This document shows, one piece after another, positions 11,738 through 41,094 of a DNA stretch of 64,000 nt. Location of the stretch: positions 62,001-126,000 of IMG/VR virus record IMGVR_UViG_3300017971_000001; one strand, written 5' to 3'. The position numbers and the translations under genes are program-made. A model generated the notes under the pieces. That model was not told where the DNA came from, searched no databases, and saw only the letters and a list, made by a program, of their open reading frames with translations. Positions within the stretch are counted from its first letter, which is position 1; the number at the start of each line of letters is the position of its first letter.

Positions 11738-12844
11738 TCTGATCTCCTGTAGCGAGAGATTCCCCGGAGGAGTCCATGCCCTCTCGAGAATCCCGTGGTG
11801 TTTCTTTGAAAGCCCCTAGACAGCCAAGGCCTCGGCCACGCTTTCCCGACTCTGAGCCCGACTCCGAATCGGAAGCCGCCTGCACCCGGAGCCCTTCTCC
11901 TTAGACGCCTCACCTGACGCCGTACCAGCCGGTGCCGAGATATCGACTTCGGAAGGATCCTACCGAATACCAGCGACCGAACCCCTGGCTGAACTCAAGG
12001 CCGAGGCCGTTTGCGTAATCGAGCCCGAAGCAAACCTCCTGGCAGACGCGTCCGTGGCGAATCCTCCTCACCGATAGCCCCAAACATGGCCCTTGCTTCG
12101 ATAGCAACCGAGGCCATACGGTCTGCCGCCCCCGGCGCCCAAGCCAGAGAAGGCCCCGGACCCGAAGTGGTAGCCAACCCCAAACCCAACGAGCACGATC
12201 GATCGATACCTTCGAGGAAAAACGAACGACCTAGACCTCCTGTTTCGCAAACGATTCAATCAAGTCCTCAATACGGCGTGTAGTTGCCTTCGTCCCCTCG
12301 GCCCTGAGCCCTCTCTAGCCCAGTTCCCCTCCACCTCGGGTAACGGCCTTCTGGCCGACAGCCCCGCCCAGCAAAAACGCTGAGCAGGCCGCAGCCGAAG
12401 CCGAACATAAGCCCGCAGCAGATCGCGTCCGAAGAGGCATACGAGAACCTTTTCCTGCGCCTCAAGGAACGAGCCTTCCCAGCGCGTATCCGTTTTCCCT
12501 GTCGAGCCCGGTGCCGACCGAGACCGTGGGAAAGTAATGGCCGACGCCTCTAGCAAGGCCGATCGCTTTCCAGCAAGAGAATCGACTCAATCCGTACCCC
12601 TGCCACGTTGTCAAAATGCACACGCACGAAGGCCTTCGCCTGCGCCTCACCGGAATGACTTTCCGCCCATGCCCCTGCCTAGACCTCTGCCCCGAAACGA
12701 CGTCACGAACGAGTGAGCATTGAGCAGGCCCATTCCGATCAGGTTCTTGACACCGGACCCAAAGGCTGCTTCGGTCCCGGACCCGTATCCGTGCCCGCTC
12801 GGGAAGTTGTTGAACCTCAGGCGCTTCCTCCCTGCCCTCAGCAC
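11734..12844 (-). other. Cluster C: 6 tandem Arg-leader / Gly-rich peptide genes
   Basis: Members (-): 12647-12844, 12462-12650, 12268-12465, 12068-12259, 11910-12071, 11734-11913. Confidence 0.8.
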
Positions 12845-13044
12845 GCTTCGCTCTCTCCGTCCATGACGTTGGGGTAGCCCAGCCTGCGGTGCTGCTCCTC
12901 GAGGTCATGAAGCGCCCTGTCGATTCGCTCAGCGTCCTTGACGGAGACGCCGTCGAAGGTTTTCGGGCTGTCCCCCATGCGCCAATGAAGAATCAAGTTC
13001 GAGGCGATCGCATGCGCAACCTTCTTCGCCTCGCGCCGGTTCAC
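12838..13044 (-). CDS. Hypothetical protein
   Basis: Coupled ORF. Confidence 0.65.
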   Translation of the reverse strand: MNRREAKKVAHAIASNLILHWRMGDSPKTFDGVSVKDAERIDRALHDLEEQHRRLGYPNVMDGESEAC

Positions 13045-13448
13045 GGAACGAGCTCAAGGATTTCGTCCACAGTGAACAGCTTGCACGCCGCCATGAGGTC
13101 TGCGACCTCGACTCGATCGCCGCTCTGATTGGCATAGAACTCAGGCTGATCGTCTTCAACTGGCTTCTTGTCGAGGAGTGCCTCGAGCGTCTGGTTCATT
13201 CCCGCCAGGAGCTCGAGGAGGTGCGCGCTGTCCCAGCTGCCCTTGTCGGCGACCTCCTCCACCGAGGGAAGGTCTAGGCCCGCCGGAACGCGGCCGTTCA
13301 TGTGATAGCCGCGCTCCGCGAGCGCCTTGACCAGCTTGTAGTGAGCGTTCCTGCTGACCTGCTTGTTCTTGGAGTAGATCGCCGGAATGAATTGGACTCG
13401 GGCCTCGGCGATCTCGTAGGTCCCGTCGTCGCAGCGGATCATGGTCAT
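13041..13448 (-). CDS. Hypothetical protein
   Basis: Coupled ATG (MTMIRC). Confidence 0.7.
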   Translation of the reverse strand: MTMIRCDDGTYEIAEARVQFIPAIYSKNKQVSRNAHYKLVKALAERGYHMNGRVPAGLDLPSVEEVADKGSWDSAHLLELLAGMNQTLEALLDKKPVEDDQPEFYANQSGDRVEVADLMAACKLFTVDEILELVP

Positions 13449-17405: not shown

Positions 17406-18899
17406 TTAGGCGCCGACGCAGGCGTCCCTGTCAAGTCCACGCCCAGCCCAGCGACTAAGGCCCCAGCCTGACTCTCCCCACCATTCCTGCACGGCATAAC
17501 CGTGCGAGCTACCAAGGCCGCACCCCGCCTCATTGGAGCAGAGGCGGGCTGCCTTCCTGCCAAAGATCACGGAACGACAAAGAGGAGCAACGTGAGAGAA
17601 GCGCCGCCGCCTCACTCGCGCTCCCAGAGCTTGCGCGGCCGCGCCGCCTCCTTCTCGGCCTCGATCCGCTCGTGCTCGAGTTGCTTCTCAGCCTCGATCT
17701 TTTCCTGCTGGATCCTGTATTCCAGGTTCGCCTTGGAGGACTTCAGCACCATGACCGCAAAGATCGCCATGCAGACGATCCCGGCCAGAGACGCGATCGC
17801 GACCGCAGCGAACTTCCAGGGACCCCAATCCTCTCGACTCATTCTTGACTCCAGTTCCAAGCGAACTCTCGGTTCTTCCCTCTTCCGAACCAGCGCCCCG
17901 AGCCTACACCTGAGCACCGACGGACCCCAAATCCTTCGCCGTATTGGTGATCAAGGCCTCTCCTGCTGCCCGGTAGAGCATGAACAGGAACGAACCAGCG
18001 CGCGTTCCTGCGCCTCCGCCTCACCAGCGAAGCCCCATAGCAAGGGCGTAAGGACGCTTGGTGCCGATCCCCCAATGACAACCGAACGCCGTTGCAGCGC
18101 CGGACCACCTAAAAAGTCCCAACTTCCAGACGTAGGACCCGCACCCCCAGTGCCGATCCATGCCGAAGCCGCGGCGGTGAAAGACAGGGGGCCTGCGCTT
18201 CCTCCTTCGCTTCATTCGCCCCACCCCGCCGCCCGGCAAAGACCCCAGCCGTGCGAACTCCTGTAGTAGTTCAAGCCATTGATCAAAGACGAGCCGACGT
18301 TGCACTCGAGGCCAATGCCCCAGATCGCTGGCGAGTATCCGACCTTCATGCGGCGGCGCCTAATCACAGCCCCCTCCCCCACCAATACAGTCGGAATCCC
18401 GTCCCACAACCTCTTCCGAAGACGGGTCCCGAGTAGCCAATAGATCGGCAGAGCCCAACGCCCCAGGCGATCCTTCCGTTCTGAGCGCCCGCAGCGAACT
18501 CCAGCCCGCGGGCCTGGGGACCACATTTCCCCTACGGCGCTTCACTGCCAAAACGCTTCCGTGCCGACGCCGACCGCGCGATTGACGCCGGCTCCATAGC
18601 AACGAAAGGTCTCCGAGGTTCCGCAGACAGACCGCAGAGCGAACCTCTGGTACATCCCGCCAAGCGCGTGGTAAAGGCCCCTGGAGGTTGCCCTGTTCTC
18701 ACAGTTGAGGTGTCTGGATCTGCGACGGCGCTTCACGGATAAACCCAGCCGAACGATCTGCGAAGCCCGCGTGCGGGAGGGGGGGGCTTTTGGCCAGGCC
18801 GGCGCCTCCAAAGGAAGAACACAGACCAACGCCCACGTTAAGCGCTCTCCTAATGAACATGAACTTGTGGTGCAGGGCGCGCCTCCCTCTTCTACTCAC
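17406..18899 (-). other. Cluster D: 7 Arg-leader / Gly-rich peptide genes (two frameshifted), interrupted by one membrane-protein gene
   Basis: Members (-): 18733-18899 (fs), 18542-18736, 18364-18545 (fs), 18212-18367, 18021-18215, 17839-18024, 17406-17615. Confidence 0.8.
17612..17842 (-). CDS. Small single-pass membrane protein with coiled coil
   Basis: MSREDWGPWKFAAVAIASLAGIVCMAIFAVMVL, coupled on both sides. Confidence 0.7.
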   Translation of the reverse strand: MSREDWGPWKFAAVAIASLAGIVCMAIFAVMVLKSSKANLEYRIQQEKIEAEKQLEHERIEAEKEAARPRKLWERE

Positions 18900-19261
18900 C
18901 GTCTCCCCTTACCTCGTCCGTGCGACCGCGTCCGCGCGACCACCTGACGACGAGGGTCATGCCCTCTTCCCTGCCTCTGCTTGGGCCGAGACCTCCTCAA
19001 CTCCTTCCTCCGCTCCTTCTCGCGCAGCGCTCGCTCGTCGAGCTCCTTCTTCGCCTTCTTGTAGAGCTCCTCGAGTTCCTCGAGGTCCGAATCGATTGAA
19101 GGCGAACTCGAGGAGCAGTCAACCATGACGACCGCGTCGGTGCTTGCCGACGAAGTCGTGAGGTTCGTATCCCTCGACTGCTCGTGCCCGCTGCAGACCG
19201 TGAACGGACAGCGGTGCTTGGGGTATCCGCAGTCGCCCGGCTTTTCGGTGGACCAGATCAC
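18896..19261 (-). CDS. Hypothetical protein
   Basis: Coupled ORF. Confidence 0.55.
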   Translation of the reverse strand: MIWSTEKPGDCGYPKHRCPFTVCSGHEQSRDTNLTTSSASTDAVVMVDCSSSSPSIDSDLEELEELYKKAKKELDERALREKERRKELRRSRPKQRQGRGHDPRRQVVARTRSHGRGKGRR

Positions 19262-19611
19262 TGCTCGTCAGGTCGGGCGAGTCGCCAAGCGGCGATCGTG
19301 TAGTCCTTTTCGTTCTCTCTCTCTTCATTGAGGTAGCGAACATGATCCGCTCCGGAATCCCAGCCCGTATCTACGAACACGCCCTTGACGCCCGTGAGCT
19401 TATTGATCACCAGGTCGCCGTTCTCGATCTCCTTCGTGCGCGAATGAACAGCGGCGACGCCGCCGACGCAATCGCAGCGCGCTCGAGACGGGCCAATGAC
19501 CACGAAGGCAAAGCAGGCGACGCTGGAAACAGCAGCAATCCAGAGCAGCGTTCCATGATCGTCGCCCTTGACCACTGCGCCGACCGCGCCGACGGATTCC
19601 TTGAGACTCAC
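19258..19611 (-). CDS. Membrane-anchored hypothetical protein
   Basis: TM segment LLWIAAVSSVACFAFVVI. Confidence 0.6.
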   Translation of the reverse strand: MSLKESVGAVGAVVKGDDHGTLLWIAAVSSVACFAFVVIGPSRARCDCVGGVAAVHSRTKEIENGDLVINKLTGVKGVFVDTGWDSGADHVRYLNEERENEKDYTIAAWRLARPDEQ

Positions 19612-19612
19612 G

Positions 19613-20554: not shown

Positions 20555-20819
20555 CGTTCATGACCTTGTAGACCGTCTTTCCCAAGTGACCCTGGATCAA
20601 CTTGGCCCCGGCCTTCGTTGGGCGCAAGTTGTGGTAGCTGTTCCGATAGATCAGGCCGGAGTCGAGGAGCGCCTCGACTGCCTCCTGTCGATCCGTCACG
20701 TATCCCGCGCCGATCCGCCTGCACTTGTTGCACTTGTAGCGGTAGTAGGACTCGCAGCTGCACGAATCGCATGCGAAGTCGAGGATCTCGAGCTCGGCCT
20801 GCGTGAACTCGACGTTCAC
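20532..20819 (-). CDS. Cys-rich hypothetical protein
   Basis: CDSCSC...CNKC, coupled. Confidence 0.6.
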   Translation of the reverse strand: MNVEFTQAELEILDFACDSCSCESYYRYKCNKCRRIGAGYVTDRQEAVEALLDSGLIYRNSYHNLRPTKAGAKLIQGHLGKTVYKVMNGGGQEHE

Positions 20820-21056: not shown

Positions 21057-21242
21057 TTACGCGACGCATTGTCTAAGATCGCCGGCCCCGATTCCATAAG
21101 ATCTCGAGATCCCCCGAAGAGAAGTCGACTTGGCGCAGGACCAGCCACCTCCGCCCTTGCCGAGCGACCTCCTGAGTCCCCTGGCCCTGAAGGAACCGAC
21201 CGCCGCCCCGCTGCGCCGAAAAACAACTCGCCGCCGCCTCAT
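21057..21242 (-). CDS. Solitary MxRRRR / Gly-rich family peptide
   Basis: MRRRRVVFRRSG...RGLRRSLGKGGGGW...YGIGAG; ATGA overlap with upstream gene. Confidence 0.75.
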   Translation of the reverse strand: MRRRRVVFRRSGAAVGSFRARGLRRSLGKGGGGWSCAKSTSLRGISRSYGIGAGDLRQCVA

Positions 21243-25179: not shown

Positions 25180-25455
25180 CTAAGCTCCCACGTAGAGAAC
25201 TTCGACCCTGGGGCCCATGTCCTTCTCGAACTTCTTGCCGCCGTACTCGCCGAACTCGGGCGAGCCAGGGCGCTGATCGTGGGCTTCGCAGGTGTAGAAG
25301 ATCGCCTTGTGGAAGTTGTGATCGTGCGCCGCGACCACCACCGGCATGCTCTTGTCCTTGATCCCGGACAAATACTTCTCCAAGTCTCCAACGGTGTGCA
25401 TATCCTCGATCTCCTTGCTGGGTCGAATCCTATCCAGGAACTCCGACAGGTTCAA
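25180..25455 (-). CDS. Hypothetical protein
   Basis: High-GC3 ORF; start uncertain. Confidence 0.55.
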   Translation of the reverse strand: MNLSEFLDRIRPSKEIEDMHTVGDLEKYLSGIKDKSMPVVVAAHDHNFHKAIFYTCEAHDQRPGSPEFGEYGGKKFEKDMGPRVEVLYVGA

Positions 25456-28354
25456 TGAAATCCCATAAGAGCCTGCCTGTCGCTCGACCGCGCCCTTCGC
25501 CAACAGCGCCGCCGACGCCCCAGCCATTTCTCGGGAACGTGGTTCCAATGCAGTTCGAGCCCTGACCTCTTCCCGACCAGTTCCCGCGGAACGAACTGGA
25601 GACGCAGCCGAAGGCGTAAGCGGTTCCGGTCGATAGCCAGAATGGAACGCTGCCCTTAGCGCACCCCCGGCGCCTTCTTACCACCATTGAGGCAATCCCG
25701 ATTCGTGCTCCTTGTACCGCTCGAGCGGGCCACTTCTTCCCATGCCCGCCGTGAGCCCGCAGCCCAAAGAGAACCACTCCGCCCCGCGAAAGGTGCGAAG
25801 AACGCAGCCACGCGCGATCGCGAATCTGAGCGCGAGTCCGTAGGGGCTGCCGGCGCCCGATCCACACGACCCCTCCAGGCGGGAGTTTCTGGATCTTCGA
25901 CGCTTCACGGAGAGCCGCTACCTTGCATAGACGACATGCCCCAGCCAAGCCCTCTTTTGAAGTAGAAGTTGGCAGGGCCTGGGCCGCGGATTTGCCAGAT
26001 CCTGCCGGAGACGTAGCCCCGCCTACAAAAGAGCCCGCTTGACATACAGCCCCAGTGGAGGGCGGCACTCCTTCTTCTGCGCCTCACCAGTCGGACCCCA
26101 TTCCGATCCTTCGCTTGAGGCCGCGGCCCGTTGAGTAGGTGTCGGCCCAGGGCTTCGATCGGTTTGCAATCGAGGCGCTCCCGCTGGCCCGCATGCGCGT
26201 CATGGTTGACGTCCAGCGGGCAAGGAGGAACTCGTTCCCACAGGGGGATCCGCGCCCCCGGTCACCCGATCGATACGGCCGGTCGCTGCGGTGGGCGGTG
26301 TCGAGCATGATCCCGAAGCAGAGGCCGGTAAATCTTCGACGACGTTTCACGTCAACCTCGGCGGGGGTAGAAAATTGAATAGAACCTTCTGAGTCCTGAT
26401 CCGACCGCGCAGTAGTTGGACCCTCGGCCTCTGAAGCAGCCATGCCTGAACATGGCGAAGTCGCGCAACCCGCTCCCAGCGCCCCTTGAAAGCCCTCTTC
26501 TCCACATGCTCTTGCTGGAAGGCCTCCTTCGCCGTCTCATGACGACCTCCGAACTCGGAACCACTTCGCAGAACGACTCAGAGCTAGACCGAACGGGCGG
26601 CCGAGGCCATGCCCGAGCACAACCCTTGCGCGCTTCCAGCGTGTATATGAAACCAAGGACACCCGAATCCGATACTCCTGCGGAGGCCATAGCCATAGTC
26701 GTGGTGGTTGCTGTGACTATGAGTGACCAAGCCAATCCTGCGTCGACGCCTCATGAAGACCTCCGACGGAACCACTTCGCAGAGCGGCTTAAGCCTCGGC
26801 CGAACGAACGAAAGAGCCCGTAGCCCAGAACCCCCCTTGTAATCTTCCACCCCGGAAGGTCGGTGACCGGGTTACCGAAGCCGCGCTGCCTGTAGAGGCC
26901 GCAGCCGCGCTCACGAGGGTGAGTGCTGTGACCCCGGCCCTTGAGTTGAGTGATCAAGCCGGCCCTGCGTCGACGCCTCATGCAGACACTTGGATCCGCC
27001 GGACGTTTCCGGCCACCTTCCTCAGGCCGCGTCCCCAGCTGTTCGATTGGCCGTGCCCGCGCCGCCGTCTGTATCCACCAAGGTTCCTCCACCACCGAAT
27101 GCCGGCGCGGCTTGACCCGCCTCCCATTTCGCTTCGCAGTCCTGCCCCCGTCGACTTGCCGCTGCGTCGCCGAAAGACGGCTCCATGTCTTCTCCTGCGC
27201 TTCATAGGACCCAATAGGGTCCGGCGACGGACCTTCCAAAGCCGTGGCCCTTTGCCGTGCTCCACGGACCGTAGTCCCTGCCTCCGCCAAAGCTGCGAGA
27301 CTTCCCCCTCCCGAGCGCCGCCTTGGTCAAGCGCCTCCAGTTGGAAGCTGGTCTCCTCCTTCGCCTCATTGCCCGTATCCCAACCCGCCGAACAAACTCA
27401 CAAAGACGTACGGGTGGAACGGGCTCGGCACGTATCGACTGATCGCGCCGGACTTCATTGCATACCCCCTCGTCGACCAGAGCCCGCCGCCGCGGCCGAT
27501 CTTGTTCACAATCAACGCCTCGCCCCAGCGCATGCTCCAGTTGCGTGCTGTTCTTCTCCTTCGCTTCATTGAGAACGCCCGCGGAAGTGAAAAAAGGAGT
27601 GACGAATCCCTCGGCCGTACGACCGATTGGAGCCGCAGCCAGACAGTCGGATTCCATGACCAGGAACGACCAAGCACGACATGGCGAACCCCAGCCCGTA
27701 TCCACCTGCGCCGCCTCGAACCCAGACCTGCCTTCGTCTTCTGATCAAGAGAACACCCTTAGAGAGAACACCGAGCTCGAGTAGCCGCCGCAACCTCCGC
27801 CGCAGCCGAGCGCGTGGCCAATCCCAGCGCCGCACCTCGATTTCATTGAGACCAAGAGCTTGTCGCCCCACGTTGGATTGCCTCGCCCCATGTTCCGCCT
27901 TAGCCCGCTCCCGAGCCTGAGGATCTCTACGCCCTGGCCGTAGAGGCCCTGGAATCCCTTCCGGTGCCGGTGACGTCGCCTCATTGCCCGATTGGCCACC
28001 AGGCTGCCCTGTACCGCCTGAGCCCGTGTCCGCACTTCACCTTTGAGGAAATGAACGTGTCTGAACTAGGTGGCTGCCCCCTGCTGATCGAACGGCGAAT
28101 CCCGGACCCGAGGACGCGTGAAAGCGCAGGTACGAACGTGAACTTCAAGACTGAACTCCGGCGCCTCTTCATGACGGAAGCGTCTCCGGCTCCCTGAGCG
28201 AGTGACCACGGTAGACGCCTAGCCCTCGCCCGACGCTTGGCGCGTATCCGTAGCAAGAGCTCAAGCCGTAGCCGATCATGCTAAAGAGGCAGAGCGGCAG
28301 GCCGCTGATTTTCATAGTCCTTCGAAAGTAGACTTTTCGCCGAAGCCTCCTCAT
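25430..28354 (-). other. Cluster E: 14 tandem MxRRRR / Gly-rich peptide genes (one frameshifted)
   Basis: Members (-): 28169-28354, 27981-28172, 27745-27984, 27566-27748, 27366-27569, 27202-27369, 26978-27205, 26751-26981, 26537-26754 (fs), 26352-26540, 26084-26350, 25905-26087, 25678-25908, 25430-25687. Confidence 0.85.
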
Positions 28355-30962: not shown

Positions 30963-32471
30963 TTACCGACACCGAGGGTAGTGCCTCCAGCCCGCCTTGC
31001 CCTTGCGGGAGCAGGCGCGCTCCCCCGGAGGGATCCGCCCCTTGCAGTGAATGCAGCGAATGCCGTAGTTGCCGCCGAGCGTGATCACGTTGTGATCGTC
31101 TTCGGGCGCCCCGCCAACCTCCCGGACCAACTTGCCGACGTCGTCCATGGGCTCGGTGCCGAGCGTATTCGCCTCGCTGCTGCGAACAGCGTCGTACAGC
31201 TGATCGATCAGATCAACAGCAGCCTCGAAGGAAAGCGGCAGGCTGTAGTTCTCGCCGACCAGTCGAGCGACGCCCGCAGACGATTGCACCCTGATCTTTC
31301 CCGGCTGCACGACGAAGAACGAGCCGCGGGGAGTCTTGAACTCCCTGTCTTCGTTCGCGACCTTTTCCAGGTGCAGGTTTGCCGCGTGCAGCTGCTCCTG
31401 CAGCTTGACGATCTCCGCGTTCCGGGCCTCGACCTTAGCGCTCCACTCGAGCGCGGCGTCCGCCCACTCCTTCGCGCCGAGCTCGAGCTCGCTCTTCCAC
31501 TTCAGAGCCTGGCTCGCCCAGTGCTGCTCGTCCCTGACGTAGTCTTCCCGGATCTTCGCATTCTGAGAGAGCAGGCGGCGCACTTCGTCGACGTGCTTCT
31601 CGTTACTGGTCTCGTGACCAACGGCGCACAGCCGACGTTCGAGGGCCCGAGTGCGTTCAAGCTGCCACCGCTGATTCGCTACTGCGCGCTTCCTCTCGCG
31701 GTCCAGCTGCTTGAGGGCAGCGTCGCGGTCGCCGCGCGCCTCCTCGAGGAGCGCCTTGAACATGTCGCGGCGGGACTCGGCGTGAGCGAGCTTGGCCTTG
31801 AGATTTTCGATCTCGCTCTTGGGCTCTTCTCCGGCCAGCGCGGCAGCCAGAGCGTTCCAATCGTCCCCGATAGCGCGGACCATTTCGTCCCACTGATCCT
31901 CGTGAACGTACAGCTTCCGCGGCGTTCCGAGTCCCCGCCCCCGCTCCTCGAGCCAAGCGCCGATCTTGCGCTTTCCCGACGGAAAGGCCTCTTTGTGAAT
32001 TCCAGTCACGGCCGCGGGGCACCAGTCCGACCCCGGAAAGCGGCAGAGCAAGTGGTCGCCAATCGAAACGTCCTGAAGAGGCGGCGCGCCGCAACCGCGA
32101 ACGATCAGCGGGTTCTCCCACTGCTCTTGAGCGACGGAGGTCATGACATTGTCGAAGGAGCGGAGCTCGAAGCTCACGTCGGTGTATCCGTTCACGCGGA
32201 ACAGCTTCCACTGACCCAAGACGTTGTATTCGACGACGTCGCCGACCTTGACGTCTTCCCACTTCGGAGGCTCGATCCTCTTAGGAAGGAGAACGAACCT
32301 TTCCTCAGTCGAGTGCCACCGCTTCGACTTGTCGATCGGGTCGATCAGCGTCAGGTCGCTGTTCCGCACGGTGTCCACGACCGCGATCCGCCAGCTTCTC
32401 TCCTCGGTTCGATACTTGACCCGATCGCCCGCCTTCAGGTCCCTGCCCTTGACCGTGCTCATTTGACTCAT
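30963..32471 (-). CDS. Protein with three Tudor/Agenet/SH3-like repeats and a long coiled coil
   Basis: LKAGDRVKY..E.SWRIAVV, VKVGDVVEY...GQWKLFRV, VSIGDHLLCRFPGSDWCPAAVTGI; C-terminal CxxC; ATG overlaps the stop of a peptide gene. Confidence 0.65.
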   Translation of the reverse strand: MSQMSTVKGRDLKAGDRVKYRTEERSWRIAVVDTVRNSDLTLIDPIDKSKRWHSTEERFVLLPKRIEPPKWEDVKVGDVVEYNVLGQWKLFRVNGYTDVSFELRSFDNVMTSVAQEQWENPLIVRGCGAPPLQDVSIGDHLLCRFPGSDWCPAAVTGIHKEAFPSGKRKIGAWLEERGRGLGTPRKLYVHEDQWDEMVRAIGDDWNALAAALAGEEPKSEIENLKAKLAHAESRRDMFKALLEEARGDRDAALKQLDRERKRAVANQRWQLERTRALERRLCAVGHETSNEKHVDEVRRLLSQNAKIREDYVRDEQHWASQALKWKSELELGAKEWADAALEWSAKVEARNAEIVKLQEQLHAANLHLEKVANEDREFKTPRGSFFVVQPGKIRVQSSAGVARLVGENYSLPLSFEAAVDLIDQLYDAVRSSEANTLGTEPMDDVGKLVREVGGAPEDDHNVITLGGNYGIRCIHCKGRIPPGERACSRKGKAGWRHYPRCR

Positions 32472-33232
32472 ACCCCGAATCCTCTCTCGAGGAACTGCCC
32501 GCGACCAAATTCGCGGCGTGTCCACCTGTTACCCCACCTGTCGGAAAACCTAACAACCGACAGCGACCCAAATCCAAAACGGAGACCCTCGCCGTAGCGA
32601 AAGCCTTGTCCGAACCCATTGGTCCGAACCCCCCAGCACGCCTGGTAACGCCGGCGCCTGATCACCGATTCCCGCCCGCAGCGCTGCCGACACCGACGCC
32701 GCATGCCTTGCCAAGTCCCCCCCGAGACGGAAGCGAGTTGCTGCCGCTGCCGGAGATCCTGCTCTGAGCGACTCCGAACCTCGCTCCGTTGCCAGCCGAG
32801 AACTCGACTGCGACCAAGGCCAGCCTCCTCCTCCGCGTTCTCTTCATGCGTCCTCGAAGTGCCGAATGACGAAGTGGAATCCGAGGACCCCGAAGAGGAA
32901 GCCGAACGATCGGACCGAGGCCGGAAGCACGCAGAGCATGAGCACGCACCACCAGGCTCCGATCGTGCAGATCGTGTTCACCGCTTGTTTCTGCTGAGCG
33001 GTCACGGCGAAGACCACTGCGACGAGAATTGACGGTGAACAAGGCCGCCGCCGTCGCGATAACGAAAGCTCGTGATCCCCAGGGTCCGGTACATGCCCCT
33101 GCCTCGAATGCGCGGGAAGGCCAGCTTGGCGAAGCGCCGCCCTCCAGAAGAAAAGTTGAGTCCAGATCCAATCCTCCGCCGGTGGTCCAGGGAGTACCAG
33201 AAGAAAAGCATTCGGCGCCGCCTCCTCAGCAT
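32468..33232 (-). other. Cluster F: 3 Arg-leader / Gly-rich peptide genes
   Basis: Members (-): 33002-33232, 32662-32847, 32468-32665; small TM ORF 32844-32981 in between. Confidence 0.8.
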
Positions 33233-33693
33233 TCGTCGAACGCGAATCCTCGCTCGGCTGCCCGCGCGCAGCGATCGCACTGGTAGCCGCGCTCGAGGTC
33301 CTGTCCCGTCAGGACGCCAGGGTCCTTGCACGTCGGGCAGGCGTAGACCCGCGGATTGCCGGGCCCTGCAGCACGAAGCGCCGATTCGCTGCCCGGGTCC
33401 GCAAACTCGCAGCGGTCGGCCGTGTAGTGGTTATAGGCGAGCGCGTTGTAGCAGGCCCAGCAGACCGCCTGCTCCATGAAGACGGTCACGGGCTCCTGAA
33501 CCTTGCAGCCGTAGCACCCGCCGTCGCCGAGCTCCTCGCCCGCGAAGCACTCGGGGCACTCCTCGAGCCGGATCGAATAGAGCCGGCCGCAGGCAGAGCA
33601 CTGGCTCAGCCCGCCCTCGGTAAGGGACTCGCTGTAGCCGGCGTCGTGAGCCGAGCGAAGATCGCCGGCGTCTTCGTTGTCGTAGTAGCTCAC
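33226..33693 (-). CDS. Multi-CxxC zinc-binding protein
   Basis: CSAC, CPEC, CYGC, CWAC, CPTC, CDRC. Confidence 0.75.
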   Translation of the reverse strand: MSYYDNEDAGDLRSAHDAGYSESLTEGGLSQCSACGRLYSIRLEECPECFAGEELGDGGCYGCKVQEPVTVFMEQAVCWACYNALAYNHYTADRCEFADPGSESALRAAGPGNPRVYACPTCKDPGVLTGQDLERGYQCDRCARAAERGFAFDEC

Positions 33694-33956
33694 TCTTCTT
33701 CTTCCGTGGGAACCATGAACAGCACCTGACTCTTGTTCAGGACGAAGTTGGTCCCCCCCTCGAGGGTCGTGACGTTGTCTCGCTGCCCGCGGCTGCTGTG
33801 CGTCAGGAGCGGCTCGAAGACCCCGTGCATGCCGTTCGTCCGATTCGTCGTCTCCAGGACCTGGACCTCAAGGAATCCCGAAAACTCCTTGCTGTCCCAG
33901 ACCTCCATGAGCCCGCAGAACTGAATGTGATCCCAGTTCAAAAGCTTGACGCGCAT
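33690..33956 (-). CDS. Hypothetical protein, possible Sm-like beta barrel
   Basis: C-terminal FVLNKSQVLFMVP recalls the Sm2 strand pair (compare Hfq MVYKHAISTVVP). Confidence 0.45.
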   Translation of the reverse strand: MRVKLLNWDHIQFCGLMEVWDSKEFSGFLEVQVLETTNRTNGMHGVFEPLLTHSSRGQRDNVTTLEGGTNFVLNKSQVLFMVPTEEEE

Positions 33957-34138
33957 TATTCGACTCCCTCTTCGTCGAGTTGCTTGATCGTGAGATTGAG
34001 AATGGCGCTGGATCTCGTCCAGTTGCCGCCGGGGTTCTCTGCCCTCAGACGCTCGAGATAGCGGTCGATCCGATCCGCGAGCTCGGGAGAGCAGCGAAAG
34101 CTACAGACGACCCGCTTGCCGTCCTCGTCTTCGCTCAT
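33956..34138 (-). CDS. Ribbon-helix-helix (CopG/Arc-like) regulator
   Basis: KRVVCSFRCSPELADRIDRY......TRSSAILNL; AAGGA SD; first gene of the leftward arm. Confidence 0.75.
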   Translation of the reverse strand: MSEDEDGKRVVCSFRCSPELADRIDRYLERLRAENPGGNWTRSSAILNLTIKQLDEEGVE

Positions 34139-34346
34139 TTTCGAATTCCTTTGCGTTTACCTGATCCGCCAAAGAGGACCGCACCCCTTGCGATCACGAG
34201 AGATATGTATACACGAAGAATCTCTTGTAGACAACGTCAGACTTCGCTGATATTGTTCTGCCTCGCAAGTCAAGGGGCGTCGTGTCCGGCTCCGGTGTGG
34301 TGTCGATCCTTCGCCCTCTTTCAAACGCTCAAGCAAGGAGAAAGCA
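34139..34346. promoter_or_regulatory. Divergent promoter region with paired operator-like palindromes
   Basis: Strand-switch point; TGTATACA (34206-34213) and TGTAGACA (34226-34233), 20 bp apart. Confidence 0.5.
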
Positions 34347-34748
34347 ATGAGCGACAAGCGGATTCGGGAACTGGAAAAGGCCGCGGCCGGCGGCGATACG
34401 GACGCGGCGGCTGAGCTCGAGCGCGTGCGCAGCAGGTCCTTCCAGGACCCCATGACGGCCTACTTCTCCAAGTTCATTGGGAAGGAGATCTATATCGAGG
34501 GAGCTCGCATGAACTACCTCGGCAAGCTCCTCGGCGTCGCCCAGGCGCCCGACGGCCAGCCGACCGGCCTGCTCATGTCGCCGATCCAGCGCGTCGGTGA
34601 CTGGAGCCGCACCGGCCCCGACCACGAGCACGTCATGGAAATGCCCTCGAGCGAGGAGCTCCCCGGGCTGATCCCGACGGCCGCGATCGACCAGTTCAGC
34701 GAGGCTCCGAAGGGCTGGCTGCGCCCCGTCGAGAACAACTTCGGCTAG
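34347..34748 (+). CDS. Putative Sm/LSm(Hfq)-fold protein with SDxRIRELE N-terminal module
   Basis: AAGGAG SD; very high GC3; FSKFIGKEIYIEGARMNYLGKLLGV...LLM (Sm1-like) and GLIPTAAIDQF (Sm2-like). Confidence 0.6.
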   Translation: MSDKRIRELEKAAAGGDTDAAAELERVRSRSFQDPMTAYFSKFIGKEIYIEGARMNYLGKLLGVAQAPDGQPTGLLMSPIQRVGDWSRTGPDHEHVMEMPSSEELPGLIPTAAIDQFSEAPKGWLRPVENNFG

Positions 34749-34788
34749 GCCGAGAACACAGCTTCGGTTGTCCCCCGAGGTGTCCCCT

Positions 34789-34838
34789 GAAGCGCCCGCC
34801 GGCCACGCTCCCCCTCGTGCCGGCGGGCGCTTCTCTTT
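34789..34838 (+). terminator. Intrinsic terminator / attenuator hairpin
   Basis: GAAGCGCCCGCCGG...CCGGCGGGCGCTTC followed by TCTTT, between the Sm-like gene and cluster G. Confidence 0.65.
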
Positions 34839-36378
34839 AGAAGGTATCGCATGAATCGCCGACGCAGGAACAATGCCGCCTTCGATTTCTCGCCTAAGAA
34901 TTGGCGCTGGTGTGAAGGTCTAGGCTGGGGGCTCGGACGGTCGCTGGGATCCGGAGTGAATGATTCGCGGGGAGTCGGGCAAGGATTCGCTGCATTCGAC
35001 AAACTCGAGTTCGACTACTGGCGCTGGGAGTCCATGTCCGACGAGTGTCTGGCCGGCTTTCTTGAAAGCGTTGAGTGACCCGACGCAGAAGACGAATGAT
35101 CTACTACAGCAGCGGAGTCGGCCTTATGTCCCCGCGCCGGCGAGGTGAAGGTGAACCCTGCGGCGCCGGCCTCGGCCTCGGCAGAGGAAGAGCTCTTCTT
35201 CAGGGCGGGTACGCACTCTTGCTGTTTCCACACCGACCTGAGAGCGGCTGGGGGTTGGGTGCCGACTGCGGCTGGGGTGTGGAGTATCTGTGAGGCGACG
35301 CAGGCGCGCTTATGGACGGGTTTTTAGCACCTGGCTCGGAATCGGACAGACCAGGTTCGCAGGATCTGCTCAACGCCTGGCCGTTGGGATCGGCCGGAGT
35401 GAATACATAGGGCACGGCATGGGAATCGGAATCGGGAGGGGGTCATGAAGCGAATCAGGCGACGCGGCGGCCTCTCGATCGACTTCTCGCCCAAGCGCCC
35501 GCTGGATTGTGAAGGGTGGGGCGTAAAGAGAGCGCTCGGCGCAGGGTCGGCCAGCGTCCGCGGAGTCGGTCTCATGGTCGCTGACTTCGGTTGCATTGAG
35601 TCGCTTGGGCCCTCTGTTCTTGGAGATAACTTCGAATGGCTTGGCTGGGAAGGGCTCTCAGACGAAGTGCTCCAAGCAGAGATCGAATCACTGGAGGAAT
35701 CCACTTGAGGCGGATCCGCCATGCAAGGCTTATCGGGCAGACTGGTATCGGCGTCGACTTCGGCGTGGGGACGGGCGTCGAGGACTGGCAGGAGCTCCAA
35801 ATTGGAGTCGGGGCCGGGATCTACCATTGGTGCTCCTGGCTCAGGTGGACCCAATGAAGCGAAGGAGGCGAGTCTTTTTCTTGAACACCCGGCTCGCAGG
35901 GCAGTGGAGGAGAGTCGGCGCTGGCTGTGCGAGCCTCTTCGGCAGCGGGACGCCAGGTCGGTATCAAGTCGTGCGTGGCTGGGGCCTCGGCTATGCAGAC
36001 GGTTCGAGGTAGTCATGACCAGACGGCGAAGAAGAAACGTTGGCCAAGTTGGCTGGGGGTTAGAGATCGCAGAAGGGATAGGGACGGGAGAATTCCCGCC
36101 TAATTATTCATGCGGGAGAGGACTCGACTTCGAGCATGGCTACTTCCTCCTCTAGGCGGGGCCGGGTTTCTTCCGAGGAGCGCAACTGTAATGCGTCGGC
36201 GAAGAAGGCGGGTTGTCTACTATGCAGGCGCGTCGGGCTGCATGATCGTGACCGGAAGGGCAGAGGCAAGGCCGAGAGGGTCCGGCCTTGGCTTCAATCG
36301 ATCTCCGCCCCAGCAAGGACAGCTAACGAGCGGGGGCTGGGGACTGAATGCCGACTGCGGCTGGGGACTGGAGTACCC

Positions 36379-36591
36379 ATGAGTATCAAGAAAGCCAGAC
36401 TCGATCACGCGGCGCGGAACGATCACAGTTGCTGCACCCGGCTTCCGGGCGAGAACTTCCACACAGAAGAGTGCCCGGTCTGCGGACGGCTCATGCTGGT
36501 CAGCAGGGCGCTCGTCTTCAAGTGCATGGGGATTGGGTTCTTCCTCGGCGCGTTCGCGGGCAGCGCGGTCATGGAATGGGCGACTTCGTGA
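36379..36591 (+). CDS. Small Zn-ribbon/TM protein embedded in cluster G
   Basis: MSIKKA...CPVCG...TM tail; coupled on both sides. Confidence 0.6.
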   Translation: MSIKKARLDHAARNDHSCCTRLPGENFHTEECPVCGRLMLVSRALVFKCMGIGFFLGAFAGSAVMEWATS

Positions 36592-38368
36592 CCCGAAGAA
36601 GGAGGAGGCTTATCAGCAGCGCGGCTGGCTGGTGTTGCGGAGAATTCTGCAAGCCGTTCGGCGTCGGTGTCTACACGGACATTGGAGTCGGGGCGACTAC
36701 GGACGCGGTCGGTCGAGGAACTCGATCCGCATACGGTCACGGACAGCGCAGAAAGGGCTGGTCGTGAAGCGGCGTCGGCGCATGATCAGCTGCTACAAGA
36801 TCTCAGAGCGAGGGCTCGATCGGTTCAACGGGGCGGTCAGGCACCGAAAAGGTGAGTGGGGTGGGCTGCGGTCTGCAGTAACCGCGTTCGGAAGGCTGTC
36901 GATCGTAGGCATGGGGTTCGGCCTCGGTCGAAGGAACGGATTTTTTTGGTAAGGCGAAGGAGACACTCGAGGGGTGAATGGAGATCTCGCGGAAGGGGGC
37001 TCGGACGCTACTCGATCCAGGGTCGGTGGCGTTTCTACTACCCGCCCATTTACCCCTACCGCGCCCTCCCCAGGGGAGTCGAAATCGCCGCAGCCGTTGG
37101 CTGGGGCGCGGGTCACGCCAATGGATACGGTGGACGCAGGCGGTCGCATTGAAGAGGAAGAGGCACAACCGATCGCTTGGATTCTACCTCGGGTCGTCTG
37201 GGGCCGGCGGTCCACGCCACAGACGGCGCCGCCCGAAGGGCCGAGTCTACGGAGCCGGTTTCAGAATCTCCATTGCGTGGGGCAGTCTGGGAGGCGCTCC
37301 CTGCGTAGTGTCCGGAGGGCTCGGTTACTCGGTCGGCACCGCAGGAAACAGGCACCCTTCCTGCGAATTTGGGTTCGGTTTGAACTGCTTGTCATGAAGC
37401 GACCGCGACGACGATACCGAGTCCCCGACGTTCACCTCCCGCTCGAGCTCGACGCGTTCGGCTGGGGACTGCGCTGCTTCGGGCAAACTCGCTGGGACTG
37501 GTTCGACGAGCTCGTGGTTGGAGGGCTGGGCTTGAGGCGAAAGACAGGCGCCGGTCAACGGCGCTGCGCAGGCGTTCACCACAGGCCAGACGAGTGGCCG
37601 CCGAGATCGCACGAGGTCATTTTCTAAATGAAGAGATCGAGGCGGAGGTATCGCGTTCACGACGCAAACTCGTTCGGCCAGCCTGACTCCTACGGCTGGG
37701 CCATGGACGGATTCGGTCAGCTGGACTGGCGCTGGTACGACCCCATGTATGTCGAGGGGAGGGGCCTCGGGCGGAAGTTGGGAGACGGGCTGTGGTATGG
37801 AGCGGGGGCGTCTCGACTCAACCGGCGCTACACGCTCATGTACGAGGGGCCTGAATGAGAAGGCGGCGCAGAATGCCCCAGATTCGATTCAACTGCCCTG
37901 AGTCCGCAGGGTTCGGGCTGAATGAATCGGGCTTGAATTCGTGGTGGTCTCGTCAGCCTCCGCGGGGAAGCGGGCTATGGCTGCCGGTAGGGCTGGCGTG
38001 CTGGTCATGAAGCGTCGTCGACGGATCGGCAACCCCTGCTGCAGCCACATGCGTGGATACGGCCTGAGGAAAACGCTGAGCGTTGGGCTCTGTCCTTTGG
38101 TCTGGGATCGATTGAAGTCCCTTGAATCGGGGCGAGGTTTGGTCCACGCGTTCGGCTGGGGGATCGAATGAAGCGCAGGCGGAAATGCAGGCGGCCGAAG
38201 AGGTTCGTCTCGACGGGGCTCACTCCCTATCACTGGATCAACCTCGAGCGAGGCGTTGGGCTAAGGTGTTTTGTTGGGTCCGGGGTCATATCCTCTTGGG
38301 GTGACTATGTGATCGGCAGGAACCCCTCTCAAGCATGAAGTGAAACGCACAAACAAGGAGGAACTGGA

Positions 38369-38791
38369 ATGACGAAAGCGAACAAAGAGGTCCCCGGGGA
38401 TCTCGCGAAATTGATCCACTGCTACACCGGGCCGGGGGTCGCCCTCTACGCTCAGACGCAGCGAGGCGAGAAGAGCCGGCTGCCGAGGGAGCGCCTGGAG
38501 GAACTCGTCGAGGAGGGTTGGCTCTCGGCTCACGATCGATCGTTCGCTGAAGGCTGGGACGGGGAAGAGGAAGAGATCGCTCCCGAGTTCGAAGACGGGA
38601 GGTGGTGGAACCCCGGCACCGGCGACGAGATCCCCGCCGAGAAAGTCTACCGCTCCTACCTGACTCTTCCGGCGGCCCACGAAACGCACGCAGCAAAGCT
38701 GGCTCGACTCGAGCGCCTGCGGAGCCGAGTCCGCGAGACGCTCGACGAGATCGCCGCCCTGGAGCAAGAACTCGGAATTCAGGGCGAGTGA
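38369..38791 (+). CDS. Hypothetical protein embedded in cluster G
   Basis: AAGGAGG SD, high GC3. Confidence 0.75.
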   Translation: MTKANKEVPGDLAKLIHCYTGPGVALYAQTQRGEKSRLPRERLEELVEEGWLSAHDRSFAEGWDGEEEEIAPEFEDGRWWNPGTGDEIPAEKVYRSYLTLPAAHETHAAKLARLERLRSRVRETLDEIAALEQELGIQGE

Positions 38792-41094
38792 GGCGGCACA
38801 GACTGCGATTCTGCAGACGGAAAGACGCTGGCGTCGGACTGCGCTACGCCATGAGCGGCATGCAGCACTTCGCGCCGCACCCATTCATGCTCGTGAGGTT
38901 GCACGTCATTGGACGAGGGGTCGGACGAGGCTATGTGGGCCAGGACGCGTCCCTGCGGCCCGATCCGAGCCGCGCCCTGAGGCGGGGCGTATGAGCCGTC
39001 GTCGCAGAACCTTCTGGCTCTTTGTGGACGGAGGTCTGGGCAAGGGCCTGGGCGACAACCACGCCGCCGGCGCCGAGTGCGACGCGTGGGAGCTCGGCGA
39101 ACTCGGGTTCGACATTGACCTCCCCTTCGAGGGAAGCGGGCTGCGCCGATCGTGCGGCTGGGGAATCGAGGGGCTGGGTCCGTGGTGAGGCGGCGCAAGC
39201 GAAGGAAGTGGTTCTTCACGGACGCCGGCGTCGGGCGCGGGGCTCAGGCCCGCCACGGAATTGGACTTGAGTACATGCCCTCGTCCATGGAAGGGTGCGG
39301 GCTGTGGCGCCCTTGGGCTGGGGGAACGAATGAGGCGGAGAAGAAGGCCGGCGGGCGTCATTTCGGACGAACTCATGATCGGACTCGGGCTGGGCGACGA
39401 GATCGGCGGCGGTCAGTTCTGGGGAGCCGGGATCGGTTTGCGCCGTGGCTGGGGATCGTGGCGATCCAAGTCGGTCGCCCTGGAGGCCTTTGCTCTATGA
39501 GGCGACGCAGGAGAGTGAAGACCGGCATGCTTTGGGACTGGGAGATTGGAGTCGGGCTCGAGGGGACGGGCGGATTGCTCAATTACGCGCACGGCCTGCT
39601 GAGTTACATGTCGACCGCTTGGATCAGCTACAGCGGGCGAGGTGATTGCCGCGGGCTCGGTGAAGGAGATCCGCGTTGAAGCGAGGAAGGCGAGTGAAGA
39701 CCGGGATCCTCCATTCGAAGGAAATCTCCGCGGGAATGATCAGTTACCAATGTATCCATTACGGAAGAGGGCTTAGGAACCACCTATCCCCTTGGCGCAC
39801 ATTCTTCTATCGAAGCCGTGGGCTTGGTAAATGGTGAGGCGCAGGCGACTGGCAATCCTCGGCCTCGATAGCATGGAGGCCGTCGCCCTCATGACGGGAG
39901 AGGGCAAGATTGCGCCAGCCGACGAGCTCGGCGGCGAGGTCGGATACGGTCTGCTGGTCGAGGCTGGCTACGGTCACGCGACGACCAAAGGGAATAGCTA
40001 TCTGCGCTGCACGGGACGAGGTTTGAGGAAGAGCGTGTCTGGAGGCATTCGATCATGGTAAGGCGGAGGCGAAGGCTGAACTCCGGTTACTACTGGGGCG
40101 TCGCCGGGGCCGGGTTCGGCCGGCTGGTTGGCTGGGGGGCCTCTATCGCAATTGGGGAATCCGCAGAGCGCAACGTGGGAATCGGTGTCGGCGGTGGCGT
40201 CATGCCTTCCGGCGCTGCTTTGATCGACGCGGGGTGGCGGTGGTAAAGAGGCGTCGGCGCAGGCCGTTACCTGCGATCATTTTCTGCGCCGCTGGCGCAG
40301 GAGCGAACACCCACTCGGAATTCAATCGGCGGGACTTTGGCCTGGGGCAGCAGTCAGAGATCGGGTTCGCAAGAACGGGTCGAGACTCGTGCCTGGGCGG
40401 GGCCGGTTTCTCGGTATCGATCGGAGCAGGGATCGTCTCCGGGGCCGGGAAGGCCCTCACCGGTCACTACTGGGGGTACCTGTGAAAAGGCGGCGCAGGA
40501 CCATTCTCTCGAGCTTCTGCAGCTGGTTCTATCCGAAGCGGCGGGTCATGGGGCGAGGCCGCAGGCGGTACGTTGGAACCGGCCGGAACAAGCGGCCTGG
40601 GGTGCCTACGGCCTGGGGCGACGGGCAGTATCAGTGCCTCGCGATCGGCGTCGATCGAGCCACGGGCTTCGGGCGGGGGTCCTTTCATTGAGACGGCGCC
40701 GCTACCGCATTCACTACACTCGCTACCTCCAGCGCGGAGGGCCCTACCGCGGCTGCGGTCAAACGTTCTGCGTCGGCGTCTCGAACCTCGACTTCTTCAG
40801 GATCGGATCTGGAATGGGCTGCGGTAGAGAGTCGGGTCGCGCACAGCAGCGAGACGTCGGCGGGTCGTTCCAATGAATCGGCGCCGTAGGCGGCGGGCGG
40901 TTCAAACTCCGTTCTTTGGTCCCTGCTCTTCAGGGCTGCGGCGAATCACAGGAGCCGCCATTACCGGGAGGTTTCATTACCGATACGTTGCTGGCTGCGG
41001 AGTTGGTGTATGCTTCGCGCGCCCTCCGAACCTAAGATCCTTCCAATTCACCCCCTGGCCGATCTCTGGCCGCCGCCCTAGTTAGGAGAGCCGC

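What the first reader, a model, noticed from the sequence alone, without database searches (positions are those of the whole stretch)
11910..39837. Paralogue pairs show birth by duplication, rapid divergence and dispersal between arrays
Seen: neighbouring or nearby pairs 37394/37628 (MKR.RRRYRV.D...D..GW....FGQ..W.W.D...V.G.GL.RK.G.G), 35075/36191 (YY...GWGL.ADCGWG.EY), 39497/39676 (RRVKTG.L...EI..G) and 26537/26751 (VLG.GL.R.FG..LSRSAKWFR..RSS). A distant opposite-strand pair is also present: 11910 (RRIRHGR...FGLDY..G.GLE..Q) and 35705 (RRIRHAR...IGVDF..G.GVE..Q). Even the closest pairs are heavily diverged, with Gly/Trp/Cys anchors kept. Inference: diversifying selection typical of a host-virus arms race, with no reverse transcriptase in the window to explain it.
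Basis: partly seen in the sequence, partly recalled or inferred. Interest (0 to 1): 0.6.

Follow-up and report, generated by a model that had tools for sequence, protein, structure and literature searches.

The report
Huge-phage family of tiny arginine-headed proteins
The similar pairs belong to about 94 tiny, very basic, glycine/arginine/tryptophan-rich genes in head-to-tail arrays of a 245-kb phage; they are real, conserved genes of an undescribed family with unknown function, not products of runaway diversifying selection.

Summary
The fifth (11910/35705) rests only on the shared RRIRH head.

All of them belong to one family of 94 ORFs, 78 of them in the window. Each ORF is 46-93 aa and starts M/V/L-(K/R)-RRRR. 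Units are tiled with NTGA start/stop overlaps. The bodies are built from an octad, G-x-G-[LV]-x-R-[SA]-hydrophobic. Median net charge is +10. The family takes up 7.6% of a complete 245-kb virus genome.

The units are protein-coding. Arg codons vary between CGN and AGR. Nucleotide identity by codon position is 2 > 1 > 3.

A related phage has collinear orthologues for about 45 of 61 comparable units. Pooled dN/dS is 0.23, against 0.24 for 33 ordinary neighbouring genes, and no unit exceeds 1. Diversifying selection is therefore not supported.

The family does evolve by birth and death:
- The closest paralogues are enriched among neighbours.
- Units lack an orthologue more often than ordinary genes do (28% against 8%).
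- One unit is frameshifted.
- One 111-bp tract is 98% identical between two arrays 36 kb apart.

There is no match in Pfam, PHROGs, PADLOC or PDB, and the only relatives found are in that one related phage. No confident fold is predicted. Function is unknown; binding of nucleic acid or another polyanion is my inference from composition.

The parts
1386..3508 (-).
   Evidence: Eight have collinear orthologues in relative L056.
7385..10439 (-). Array of 15 units
   Evidence: Thirteen have orthologues in L056. Unit 9663-9869 is 94% identical at protein level.
11910..12650 (-).
   Evidence: Similarity to 35705 is confined to the head.
17406..18736 (-). Array of 6 units, interrupted by one ordinary 76-aa membrane-like gene (17612-17842)
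   Evidence: Orthologues are in L054/L055 and in proteins P0006 and P0008.
21057..21242 (-). Solitary unit
   Evidence: Orthologue in L055.
25430..28172 (-).
26537..26754 (-). Frameshifted copy of unit 26751-26981. The head and first part are read as a 56-aa ORF (26584-26754).
   Evidence: DNA alignment A2. The indels sum to -13 nt.
26736..26846 (-). 111-bp tract 98% identical to genome 52438-52546 (L003:12438-12546), in another array 36 kb away. It spans the last 28 codons of one unit and the head of the next.
   Evidence: Self-blastn; alignment A2; identical 28-aa C-termini.
32468..33232 (-). Two units flanking a 57-aa ordinary ORF
   Evidence: Both have orthologues in L010.
34851..38338 (+). 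Array of 17 units. One unrelated 70-aa ORF (36379-36591) lies inside it.
   Evidence: The block 34851-36012 and units 36946, 37149 and 37855 have no orthologue in L010.
38991..41085 (+).
   Evidence: Units 39497, 39676 and 39834 have no orthologue in L010. L010 has units of its own here.
34138..34347 (.). Divergent intergenic region from which the minus-strand and plus-strand gene blocks, arrays included, run outwards. It holds a sigma-70-like site at 34228-34256 (+).
   Evidence: Gene map and consensus scan. Weak evidence only.

Best explanation
The pairs are members of a lineage-specific multigene family of very small proteins. The family is encoded in head-to-tail arrays in the accessory region of a complete 245-kb phage genome.

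Shown:
- Each unit is a separate gene of 46-93 codons. It has its own start codon, and that start nearly always overlaps the previous unit's TGA stop (NTGA). This is the same gene grammar as the phage's ordinary genes.
- Each product starts Met-(Lys/Arg)-Arg4-5.
- The rest of each product is built from 1-4 copies of an eight-residue motif, G-x-G-[LV]-x-R-[SA]-hydrophobic. Trp, Gly and Arg are the conserved positions. Median net charge is +10 and pI is about 11.7.
- The family grows by local duplication and diverges under ordinary purifying selection.
- Units are lost by deletion and frameshift.
- Sequence is occasionally copied between arrays.

Inferred, not shown:
- The peptides act as polyanion binders (RNA, DNA or ribosome) during host takeover.
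- The Arg head works like an arginine-rich motif.
- The GxG-flanked five-residue segments form short beta-strands, which may fold only on a partner.
For: Family and tiling:
- 94 units were found. 74 of 81 canonical starts are NTGA, and 40 junctions overlap by exactly 4 nt.
- Body-only all-against-all scores beat shuffles: 111 pairs score >=50, against 7.7 expected.
- G.G[LVI].R occurs 53 times against 3.7 expected (z 27). GxG spacing of 8 occurs 69 times against 3.0.

Coding:
- Arg is encoded by both CGN and AGR.
- Half of the identical residues in paralogue pairs use different codons.
- Nucleotide identity by codon position is 0.71/0.78/0.51 in 45 orthologue pairs.
- Pooled dN/dS is 0.23, against 0.24 for ordinary genes.
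- SD-like cores lie upstream of 41% of units, against 18% at random positions inside units.

Birth and death:
- Close paralogues are enriched among neighbours.
- 17/61 units lack an orthologue, against 3/36 ordinary genes.
- One unit is frameshifted and one 98%-identical tract links two arrays.

Charge and composition.
Against: - There is no expression evidence. No RNA run holds the sequence.
- Codon usage is atypical: GC3 is 0.70 against 0.81, and AGR makes up 34-44% of Arg codons against 11%. SD sites are fewer than in ordinary genes. Expression may therefore be low or specially regulated.
- No fold is predicted. AF2 with 78 paralogues gives pLDDT 56 and no secondary structure. The ESM Atlas model has pLDDT 0.30.
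- The proposed function rests on composition alone.
- RGG triplets, typical of known Gly/Arg RNA-binding boxes, are depleted: 4 against 21.8 expected.
- The orthologue comparison rests on fragments of a single related phage.
Confidence: 0.65

Rival explanations
1. The arrays are an arms-race cassette whose members diverge quickly under diversifying (positive) selection, without a reverse transcriptase.
For: - Units lack an orthologue in the relative more often than ordinary genes do (17/61 against 3/36, p = 0.036).
- The plus-strand array is 6.2 kb here and 3.4 kb in the relative, and each phage has private units.
- Family dN is 1.6 times that of ordinary genes.
- There is no RT in the genome.
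Against: - Pooled dN/dS is 0.23, equal to ordinary genes. None of 42 units exceeds 0.69.
- dS is raised as much as dN.
- Paralogue dS is saturated, so the duplicates are old rather than fast-diverging.
- Most minus-strand units are collinear and conserved between the two phages.
Confidence: 0.15
2. The ORFs are not genes. The arrays are G-rich non-coding DNA or RNA elements, and the 'proteins' are chance reading frames of a high-GC sequence.
For: - Codon-model scores are low and GC3 is lower than in ordinary genes.
- There is no database family and no predicted fold.
Against: - The third codon position is the least conserved, and dN/dS is 0.23.
- Arg heads use both CGN and AGR codons.
- 40 junctions have exact 4-nt start/stop overlaps.
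- There are no DNA-level tandem repeats and no Rfam match.
- Thirty-eight control viral loci, about 400 kb in all, carry 0-2 such heads each and give no HMM hit.
Confidence: 0.03
3. The units are precursor peptides of a ribosomally made, post-translationally modified product: a short conserved leader and a variable core, as in multi-copy RiPP precursor arrays.
For: - Many small tandem ORFs have a conserved N-terminus and variable remainder.
- The residues Gly, Ser, Cys and Trp are ones often modified in such peptides.
Against: - Radical SAM and YcaO gave no match in the whole genome. LanC-like also gave none, but its control search rang nowhere, so that result is uninformative.
- 68 neighbouring proteins show only DHFR, DUF1643, a SLOG domain, integrase, a zinc ribbon and Yae1_N.
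- The conserved 'leader' is only 6 residues long.
- Conservation between orthologues runs through the whole peptide.
Confidence: 0.05
4. The units are membrane-active cationic peptides, like Arg/Trp-rich antimicrobial peptides or the cationic lysis peptide that replaces spanins in some phages. They would act in lysis or against competitors.
For: - Net charge is +10, and W, F and Y together make up 11% of residues.
- The peptides are small.
Against: - About 94 copies spread through a region of small accessory genes is not how lysis genes are organised.
- Only 6 of 94 have a hydrophobic segment after the head.
- No lysis genes were recognised nearby.
Confidence: 0.1
5. The units are virion-internal, protamine-like proteins that neutralise packaged DNA or are injected with it.
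For: The basic charge is extreme. Large viruses often package basic proteins (general knowledge, not tested here).
Against: - The arrays lie far from the large structural-looking genes and among small accessory genes.
- Charge neutralisation would not need about 94 individually conserved sequences.
Confidence: 0.07

Closest known systems
Multigene families in the variable regions of large DNA viruses (for example the MGF families of African swine fever virus, or gene 'accordions' of poxviruses); from general knowledge
   Same: - Tandem arrays of diverged paralogues lie in accessory regions.
- Units are gained and lost between related genomes.
- Units are under purifying selection overall.
   Different: - Here the host is bacterial: the phage carries a tmRNA and bacterial gene grammar.
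- The units are only about 64 aa and are translationally coupled by NTGA overlaps.
- There are about 94 copies, filling 7.6% of the genome.
- There is no sequence relationship.
Arginine-rich-motif RNA-binding peptides (lambda N, HIV/BIV Tat and Rev); from general knowledge
   Same: - There is a short run of arginines at or near the N-terminus of a small viral protein.
- BIV Tat uses an Arg/Gly beta-hairpin.
   Different: - No RNA target is known here.
- The head is a plain R4-5 run directly after Met.
- The body has its own GxG octad motif.
- There are about 94 paralogues instead of one regulator.
- Binding was not tested.
RGG/GAR boxes of RNA-binding proteins; from general knowledge
   Same: The composition is dominated by Gly, Arg and aromatic residues, and disorder is predicted.
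   Different: - RGG triplets are depleted: 4 against 21.8 expected, z = -4.1.
- The recurring unit here is G-x-G-[LV]-x-R.
Uncharacterised large phage-like repeat proteins P0005 (816 aa) and P0009 (578 aa), found by the profile search
   Same: - They carry the same 11-residue pattern, G-x-G-[LV]-x-K/R-S-hydrophobic-G-x-G, repeated 5-15 times.
- The P0009 repeats model as regular pairs of 5-6-residue strands (pLDDT 64, pTM 0.61).
   Different: - These are long proteins with a 22-residue period that are neutral or acidic and have no Arg head.
- The E-values (3e-6, 2e-4) come from summed repeats, so homology is unproven.
- They have no Pfam family and no significant PDB fold match.

Membership tests
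Diversity-generating retroelement target genes | A reverse transcriptase in the element or genome | tested here: not met
   PF00078 finds nothing in the complete 245-kb genome. The control genomes ring.
Diversity-generating retroelement target genes | A near-identical template/variable repeat pair at DNA level | tested here: not met
   Self-blastn finds only one array-related repeat (111 bp, 98%), and it joins two ordinary units.
RiPP precursor arrays | A maturase gene (radical SAM, YcaO, LanC-type) in the locus or genome | tested here: not met
   No radical SAM and no YcaO. The LanC search was uninformative because its control rang nowhere. No such domain was found in 68 neighbouring proteins. 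Other maturase classes were not searched.
RiPP precursor arrays | A long conserved leader and a hypervariable core | tested here: not met
   The conserved head is 6 residues. Motifs and orthologue conservation extend through the whole peptide.
Sec/Tat signal peptides | A hydrophobic h-region after the basic n-region | tested here: not met
   Only 6 of 94 units have a 12-residue window of hydropathy >=1.6 in residues 6-32. The median longest apolar run is 6.
RGG/GAR box proteins | Repeated RGG triplets | tested here: not met
   4 RGG against 21.8 expected from shuffles, z = -4.1.
Arginine-rich-motif RNA binders | A cluster of arginines in a short peptide segment | tested here: met
   The head is M-(K/R)-R4-5 in 81 canonical units, with looser heads in 13 more.
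Arginine-rich-motif RNA binders | Specific binding to an RNA hairpin | not testable with these tools
Viral multigene family evolving by birth and death | Significant similarity among members beyond composition | tested here: met
   111 body-only pairs score >=50 against 7.7 in shuffles. Eighteen score >=60 against 0.
Viral multigene family evolving by birth and death | The closest paralogues are physically clustered (tandem duplication) | tested here: met
   Adjacent pairs make up 22% of pairs scoring >=60, against 1.7% of all pairs (Fisher p = 3e-5 at score >=55).
Viral multigene family evolving by birth and death | Unit content differs between related genomes; pseudogenised members exist | tested here: met
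   17/61 units have no orthologue. The relative has private units. There is a frameshifted unit at 26537-26754.
Non-coding tandem repeat or CRISPR-like array | DNA-level repeats with a regular period | tested here: not met
   TRF and self-blastn find no repeats in the arrays. Rfam finds only two tRNAs.
Any curated protein family (Pfam, PHROGs, PADLOC, PDB sequences) | A profile match for any member | tested here: not met
   0 of 78 members match Pfam, PHROGs or PADLOC at E <= 0.01. The profile finds no PDB chain at E <= 1.

The most novel reading that the evidence does not exclude
The phage carries a library of about 94 individually conserved, arginine-headed mini-proteins as a new kind of host-takeover or counter-defence toolkit. 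Each peptide would be a short beta-hairpin-type polyanion binder aimed at a different host or phage RNA, DNA or ribosomal site. Alternatively, together they would form a cationic condensate. Unit gain and loss would tune the toolkit to the host strain.
Probability: 0.2. Interest if true: 0.8.

Novelty: new variant of a known kind. Interest (0 to 1): 0.6.

Why it matters
Huge phages are full of small genes of unknown function, but a single family of about 94 paralogues filling 7.6% of a genome is unusual for a phage. The family has a simple, recognisable grammar: an Arg head, GxG octads and NTGA coupling. It is conserved under ordinary purifying selection and has no relatives in databases of billions of proteins apart from one sister phage. 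It is therefore a clean, tractable case of a new small-protein family that the phage evidently needs.

There is also a practical lesson. Public gene calls misread parts of these arrays, for example as a 217-aa ORF running across three units. Arrays of this kind may therefore be overlooked elsewhere.

Tried and rejected
- Megablast of the arrays and tblastn of a unit against 50,697 phage records found nothing.
- The word-index search with the 78-member alignment gave no hit at E <= 0.01. The family profile is weak, giving <=33 bits on true units of the relative. A blank at the billion-protein scale is therefore not evidence of absence in distant phages.
- A two-head degenerate DNA pattern scanned over IMG/VR gave 38 loci. 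All were chance matches: 0-2 heads each and no HMM hit.
- The ESM Atlas look-alike search gave no usable feature hit.
- AF2 with the paralogue alignment gave no confident structure.
- The fold search of the P0009 repeat model found no significant PDB match, only weak beta-helix rows. The gene context of P0005 was uninformative.
- No RNA runs hold the sequence.
- Laying contigs from four DNA runs showed only identical fragments of the same phage. No variants or joints were seen, so no population-level test was possible.
- I considered stop-codon recoding and rejected it. Ordinary genes use all three stops, and successive units lie in different frames.
- The terminator scan of the plus-strand array was not above chance.
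Full report
SETTING

The window is bases 62001-126000 of a single-contig genome of 245,276 bp with 62% G+C. The tools class it as a virus record with direct terminal repeats and 100% estimated completeness. The first and last 123 bp are identical.

The genome carries five tRNAs and a tmRNA, which points to a bacterial host. It has no close relative among 50,697 deposited phages. I made a gene map with a codon model trained on the genome's own long ORFs. The map shows blocks of ordinary small genes, mostly joined by 4-nt ATGA/GTGA overlaps. These alternate with stretches where only short, low-scoring ORFs are found.

THE OBSERVATION

The translations are as quoted. Four pairs far exceed 1000 composition-matched shuffles:
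- 37394/37628: z 21.5.
- 35075/36191: z 18.8.
- 26537/26751: z 15.6.
- 39497/39676: z 10.4.

These four stay significant when the first eight residues are removed. The opposite-strand pair 11910/35705 does not (z 1.6 without the head). It shares mainly the odd head RRIRH, and the two are only marginally each other's best hits.

A three-way DNA alignment clarifies the 26537/26751 pair. The stretch 26537-26754 is a copy of unit 26751-26981 whose indels sum to -13 nt. Its head now reads as a 56-aa ORF. The stop of that tail still overlaps the next unit's ATG. This is a decaying unit, not a separate gene.

WHAT IS REALLY THERE

Scanning the genome for short ORFs that begin with a start codon followed by an arginine run gave 101 hits. 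About 80 of them were packed into a few stretches on the local coding strand. Filling the one-unit gaps added members with looser heads such as MKRPRRRY, MKRSRRRY and LKRGRRVK.

The final set has these properties:
They total 18.6 kb, or 7.6% of the genome, in 13 arrays or singletons.
- Units are 46-93 aa long (median 64).
- 74 of 81 canonical starts are NTGA, and 40 junctions overlap the previous stop by exactly 4 nt.
- Composition is extreme: G 17.5%, R 16.8% and W+F+Y 10.9%, but D+E only 4.8%. Median net charge is +10 and pI is 11.7.
- The alignment consensus is MxRRRR-x12-GxGLxxxxGxG-x13-GxGxxRxxGxGxxR.
- GxG triplets are twice as frequent as in shuffles. Successive GxG lie 8 residues apart 69 times, against 3.0 expected. 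The underlying octad is G-x-G-[LV]-x-R-[SA]-hydrophobic, and G.G[LVI].R occurs 53 times against 3.7 (z 27).
- Even without the head, all-against-all scores exceed shuffles: 111 pairs score >=50, against 7.7 expected.
- As a control, 38 unrelated viral loci (about 400 kb, many of them GC-rich) carry 0-2 such heads each, and none matches the family profile.

ARE THEY GENES?

Several lines of evidence say yes.
- There is no DNA-level periodic repeat and no Rfam family in the arrays.
- The arginine heads use CGN and AGR codons interchangeably.
- In the closest paralogue pairs, about half of the identical residues are encoded by different codons. Nucleotide identity falls in the order position 2 > 1 > 3. 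dN/dS is 0.27-0.55 with saturated dS.

The strongest test came from a related phage. The neighbouring 502-aa protein has a 49%-identical homologue on Logan contigs. Profile hits led to three more contigs of the same relative. These four loci (L010, L054, L055, L056) are syntenic with window 14-11680, 17563-24043 and 30719-44947, at 67-85% nucleotide identity.

The comparison gave these results:
- Of 61 window units in those spans, 45 have a collinear counterpart. One of these, 35075, only hits the orthologue of its paralogue 36191.
- Over 2663 codons, identity by codon position is 0.71/0.78/0.51.
- Pooled dN/dS is 0.23. The per-unit median is 0.21 and the maximum is 0.69, so no unit exceeds 1.
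- Thirty-three ordinary genes in the same spans give 0.24 over 4309 codons.

W, G and R are the best-kept residues (94%, 88% and 78%). SD-like cores precede 41% of units, against 18% of random positions inside units and 66% of ordinary genes.

The units are therefore translated genes under ordinary purifying selection. Their oddities are lower GC3 (0.70 against 0.81) and heavy use of AGA/AGG. These make up 44% of Arg codons in the head and 34% in the body, against 11% in ordinary genes.

HOW THE FAMILY EVOLVES

- Close paralogues are enriched among neighbours. Of pairs scoring >=60, 22% are adjacent, against 1.7% of all pairs. Five of the six best pairs lie within 1.5 kb. This fits tandem duplication.
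- Divergence is old, since dS is saturated in paralogues.
- Between the two phages the family changes 1.6 times faster than ordinary genes, at both kinds of site: dN 0.29 against 0.18, and dS 1.26 against 0.74. That is not the signature of positive selection.
- Turnover is higher than for ordinary genes. 17 of 61 units lack an orthologue, against 3 of 36 (p = 0.036).
- The plus-strand array is 6.2 kb here and 3.4 kb in the relative. The block 34851-36012 and units 36946, 37149, 37855, 39497, 39676 and 39834 are private to this phage.
- The relative has at least three private units. It also has a deletion that joins the orthologue of 36764 to the middle of 37394.
- One exchange between arrays is clear. 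Window 26736-26846 is 98% identical over 111 bp to genome 52438-52546, 36 kb away. The tract spans the tail of one unit and the head of the next.

WHAT THEY MIGHT DO

No curated resource recognises the family.
- None of the 78 members matches Pfam, PHROGs or PADLOC, and the profile finds no PDB chain.
- The word search with unit 37628 finds only the relative's orthologue.
- The exhaustive profile search of 1.84 billion representatives gave nine hits at E <= 0.001. Three are this phage's own, and four are from the relative. The other two are long uncharacterised repeat proteins that share the G-x-G-[LV]-x-K-S-hydrophobic-G-x-G pattern.
- The repeats of one of these, P0009, model as regular pairs of 5-6-residue strands (pLDDT 64, pTM 0.61). 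They have no significant PDB match.
- The family member itself gives no confident model.

Several specific ideas fail their tests:
- The genome has no reverse transcriptase, radical SAM or YcaO domain. The LanC search was uninformative.
- Sixty-eight neighbouring proteins yield only DHFR, DUF1643, a SLOG domain, a tyrosine recombinase, a zinc ribbon and Yae1_N.
- The heads are not signal peptides, because only 6 of 94 units have a hydrophobic segment after the head.
- The bodies are not RGG boxes, because RGG is depleted.

What remains is inference from composition. A +10 peptide with an N-terminal Arg run and Arg/aromatic short strands is most likely a binder of RNA, DNA or another polyanion. 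It would be made from the operons that run outwards from the divergent region at 34.2 kb. I put about 0.3 on that molecular function. I put much more on the family, coding and birth-and-death picture.

VERDICT

The evolutionary reading is half right: duplication, loss and inter-array copying are supported, and diversifying selection is not. The object is a new, lineage-restricted small-protein family, expanded to a degree unusual for a phage.

The main limits are three. There is only one fragmentary relative. There are no expression data. The family profile is too weak to exclude distant relatives elsewhere.

Noticed in passing
window 51194-54032: A phage-encoded compact CRISPR-Cas locus. Eleven copies of a 36-nt repeat are spaced 66-79 nt apart (51194-51950). 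They lie directly beside a 694-aa protein (51948-54032, minus strand) with a Cas12f1-like TNB domain and transposase-type PHROG hits. It resembles the small Cas12 systems reported from huge phages.
   Followed up: partly
window 56666-56708, 60812-60854; genome 241867-241911 (L009:15867-15911): Solitary copies (88-95% identical) of the same 36-nt CRISPR repeat lie far from the array. They could be orphan repeats or regulatory sites. Not examined.
   Followed up: no
window 36974-37627 (+): Public gene calls (protein P0004, and the gene tables of L012-L014) read a 217-aa ORF here. It runs out of frame across units 36946 and 37149 and ends in unit 37394. The arrays are partly mis-annotated in public collections.
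   Followed up: partly
window 34347-34748, 62163-62753, 23532-24035; DNA match 34473-34538 to window 91677-91742: A second paralogous set appears to exist. Several proteins begin with a motif like R-(I/L)-R-x-L-E-(R/K)-A-A-x-x-G-D. One 66-bp stretch is 86% identical between two such genes. This was seen by eye only.
   Followed up: no
window 1-564 and 54485-54844 (minus strand): Two proteins with similar N-termini look like the C-terminal domain of ribosomal protein L7/L12. The relative's orthologue of the first carries a PF00542 hit in the L056 gene table. Together with the tmRNA (genome 128149-128557) and five tRNAs, this suggests the phage interferes with translation.
   Followed up: no
window 3505-3990, 5086-5595, 28525-29064, 44730-45740: These are the recognisable ordinary genes near the arrays: a circularly permuted YpsA SLOG-domain protein, dihydrofolate reductase, DUF1643 and a tyrosine recombinase/integrase.
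   Followed up: partly
L012-L015 and runs X1-X6: The same phage occurs at 100% identity over more than 20 kb in several sediment and seawater metagenomes from different studies. No variants were seen in the array region.
   Followed up: partly
window 34851-35078, 35445-35708, 36015-36155, 38991-39188: Four family members are acidic overall (pI < 8) despite the Arg head. Two of them (34851, 35445) end in a Glu/Asp-rich tail. They may form a functionally distinct subgroup.
   Followed up: no
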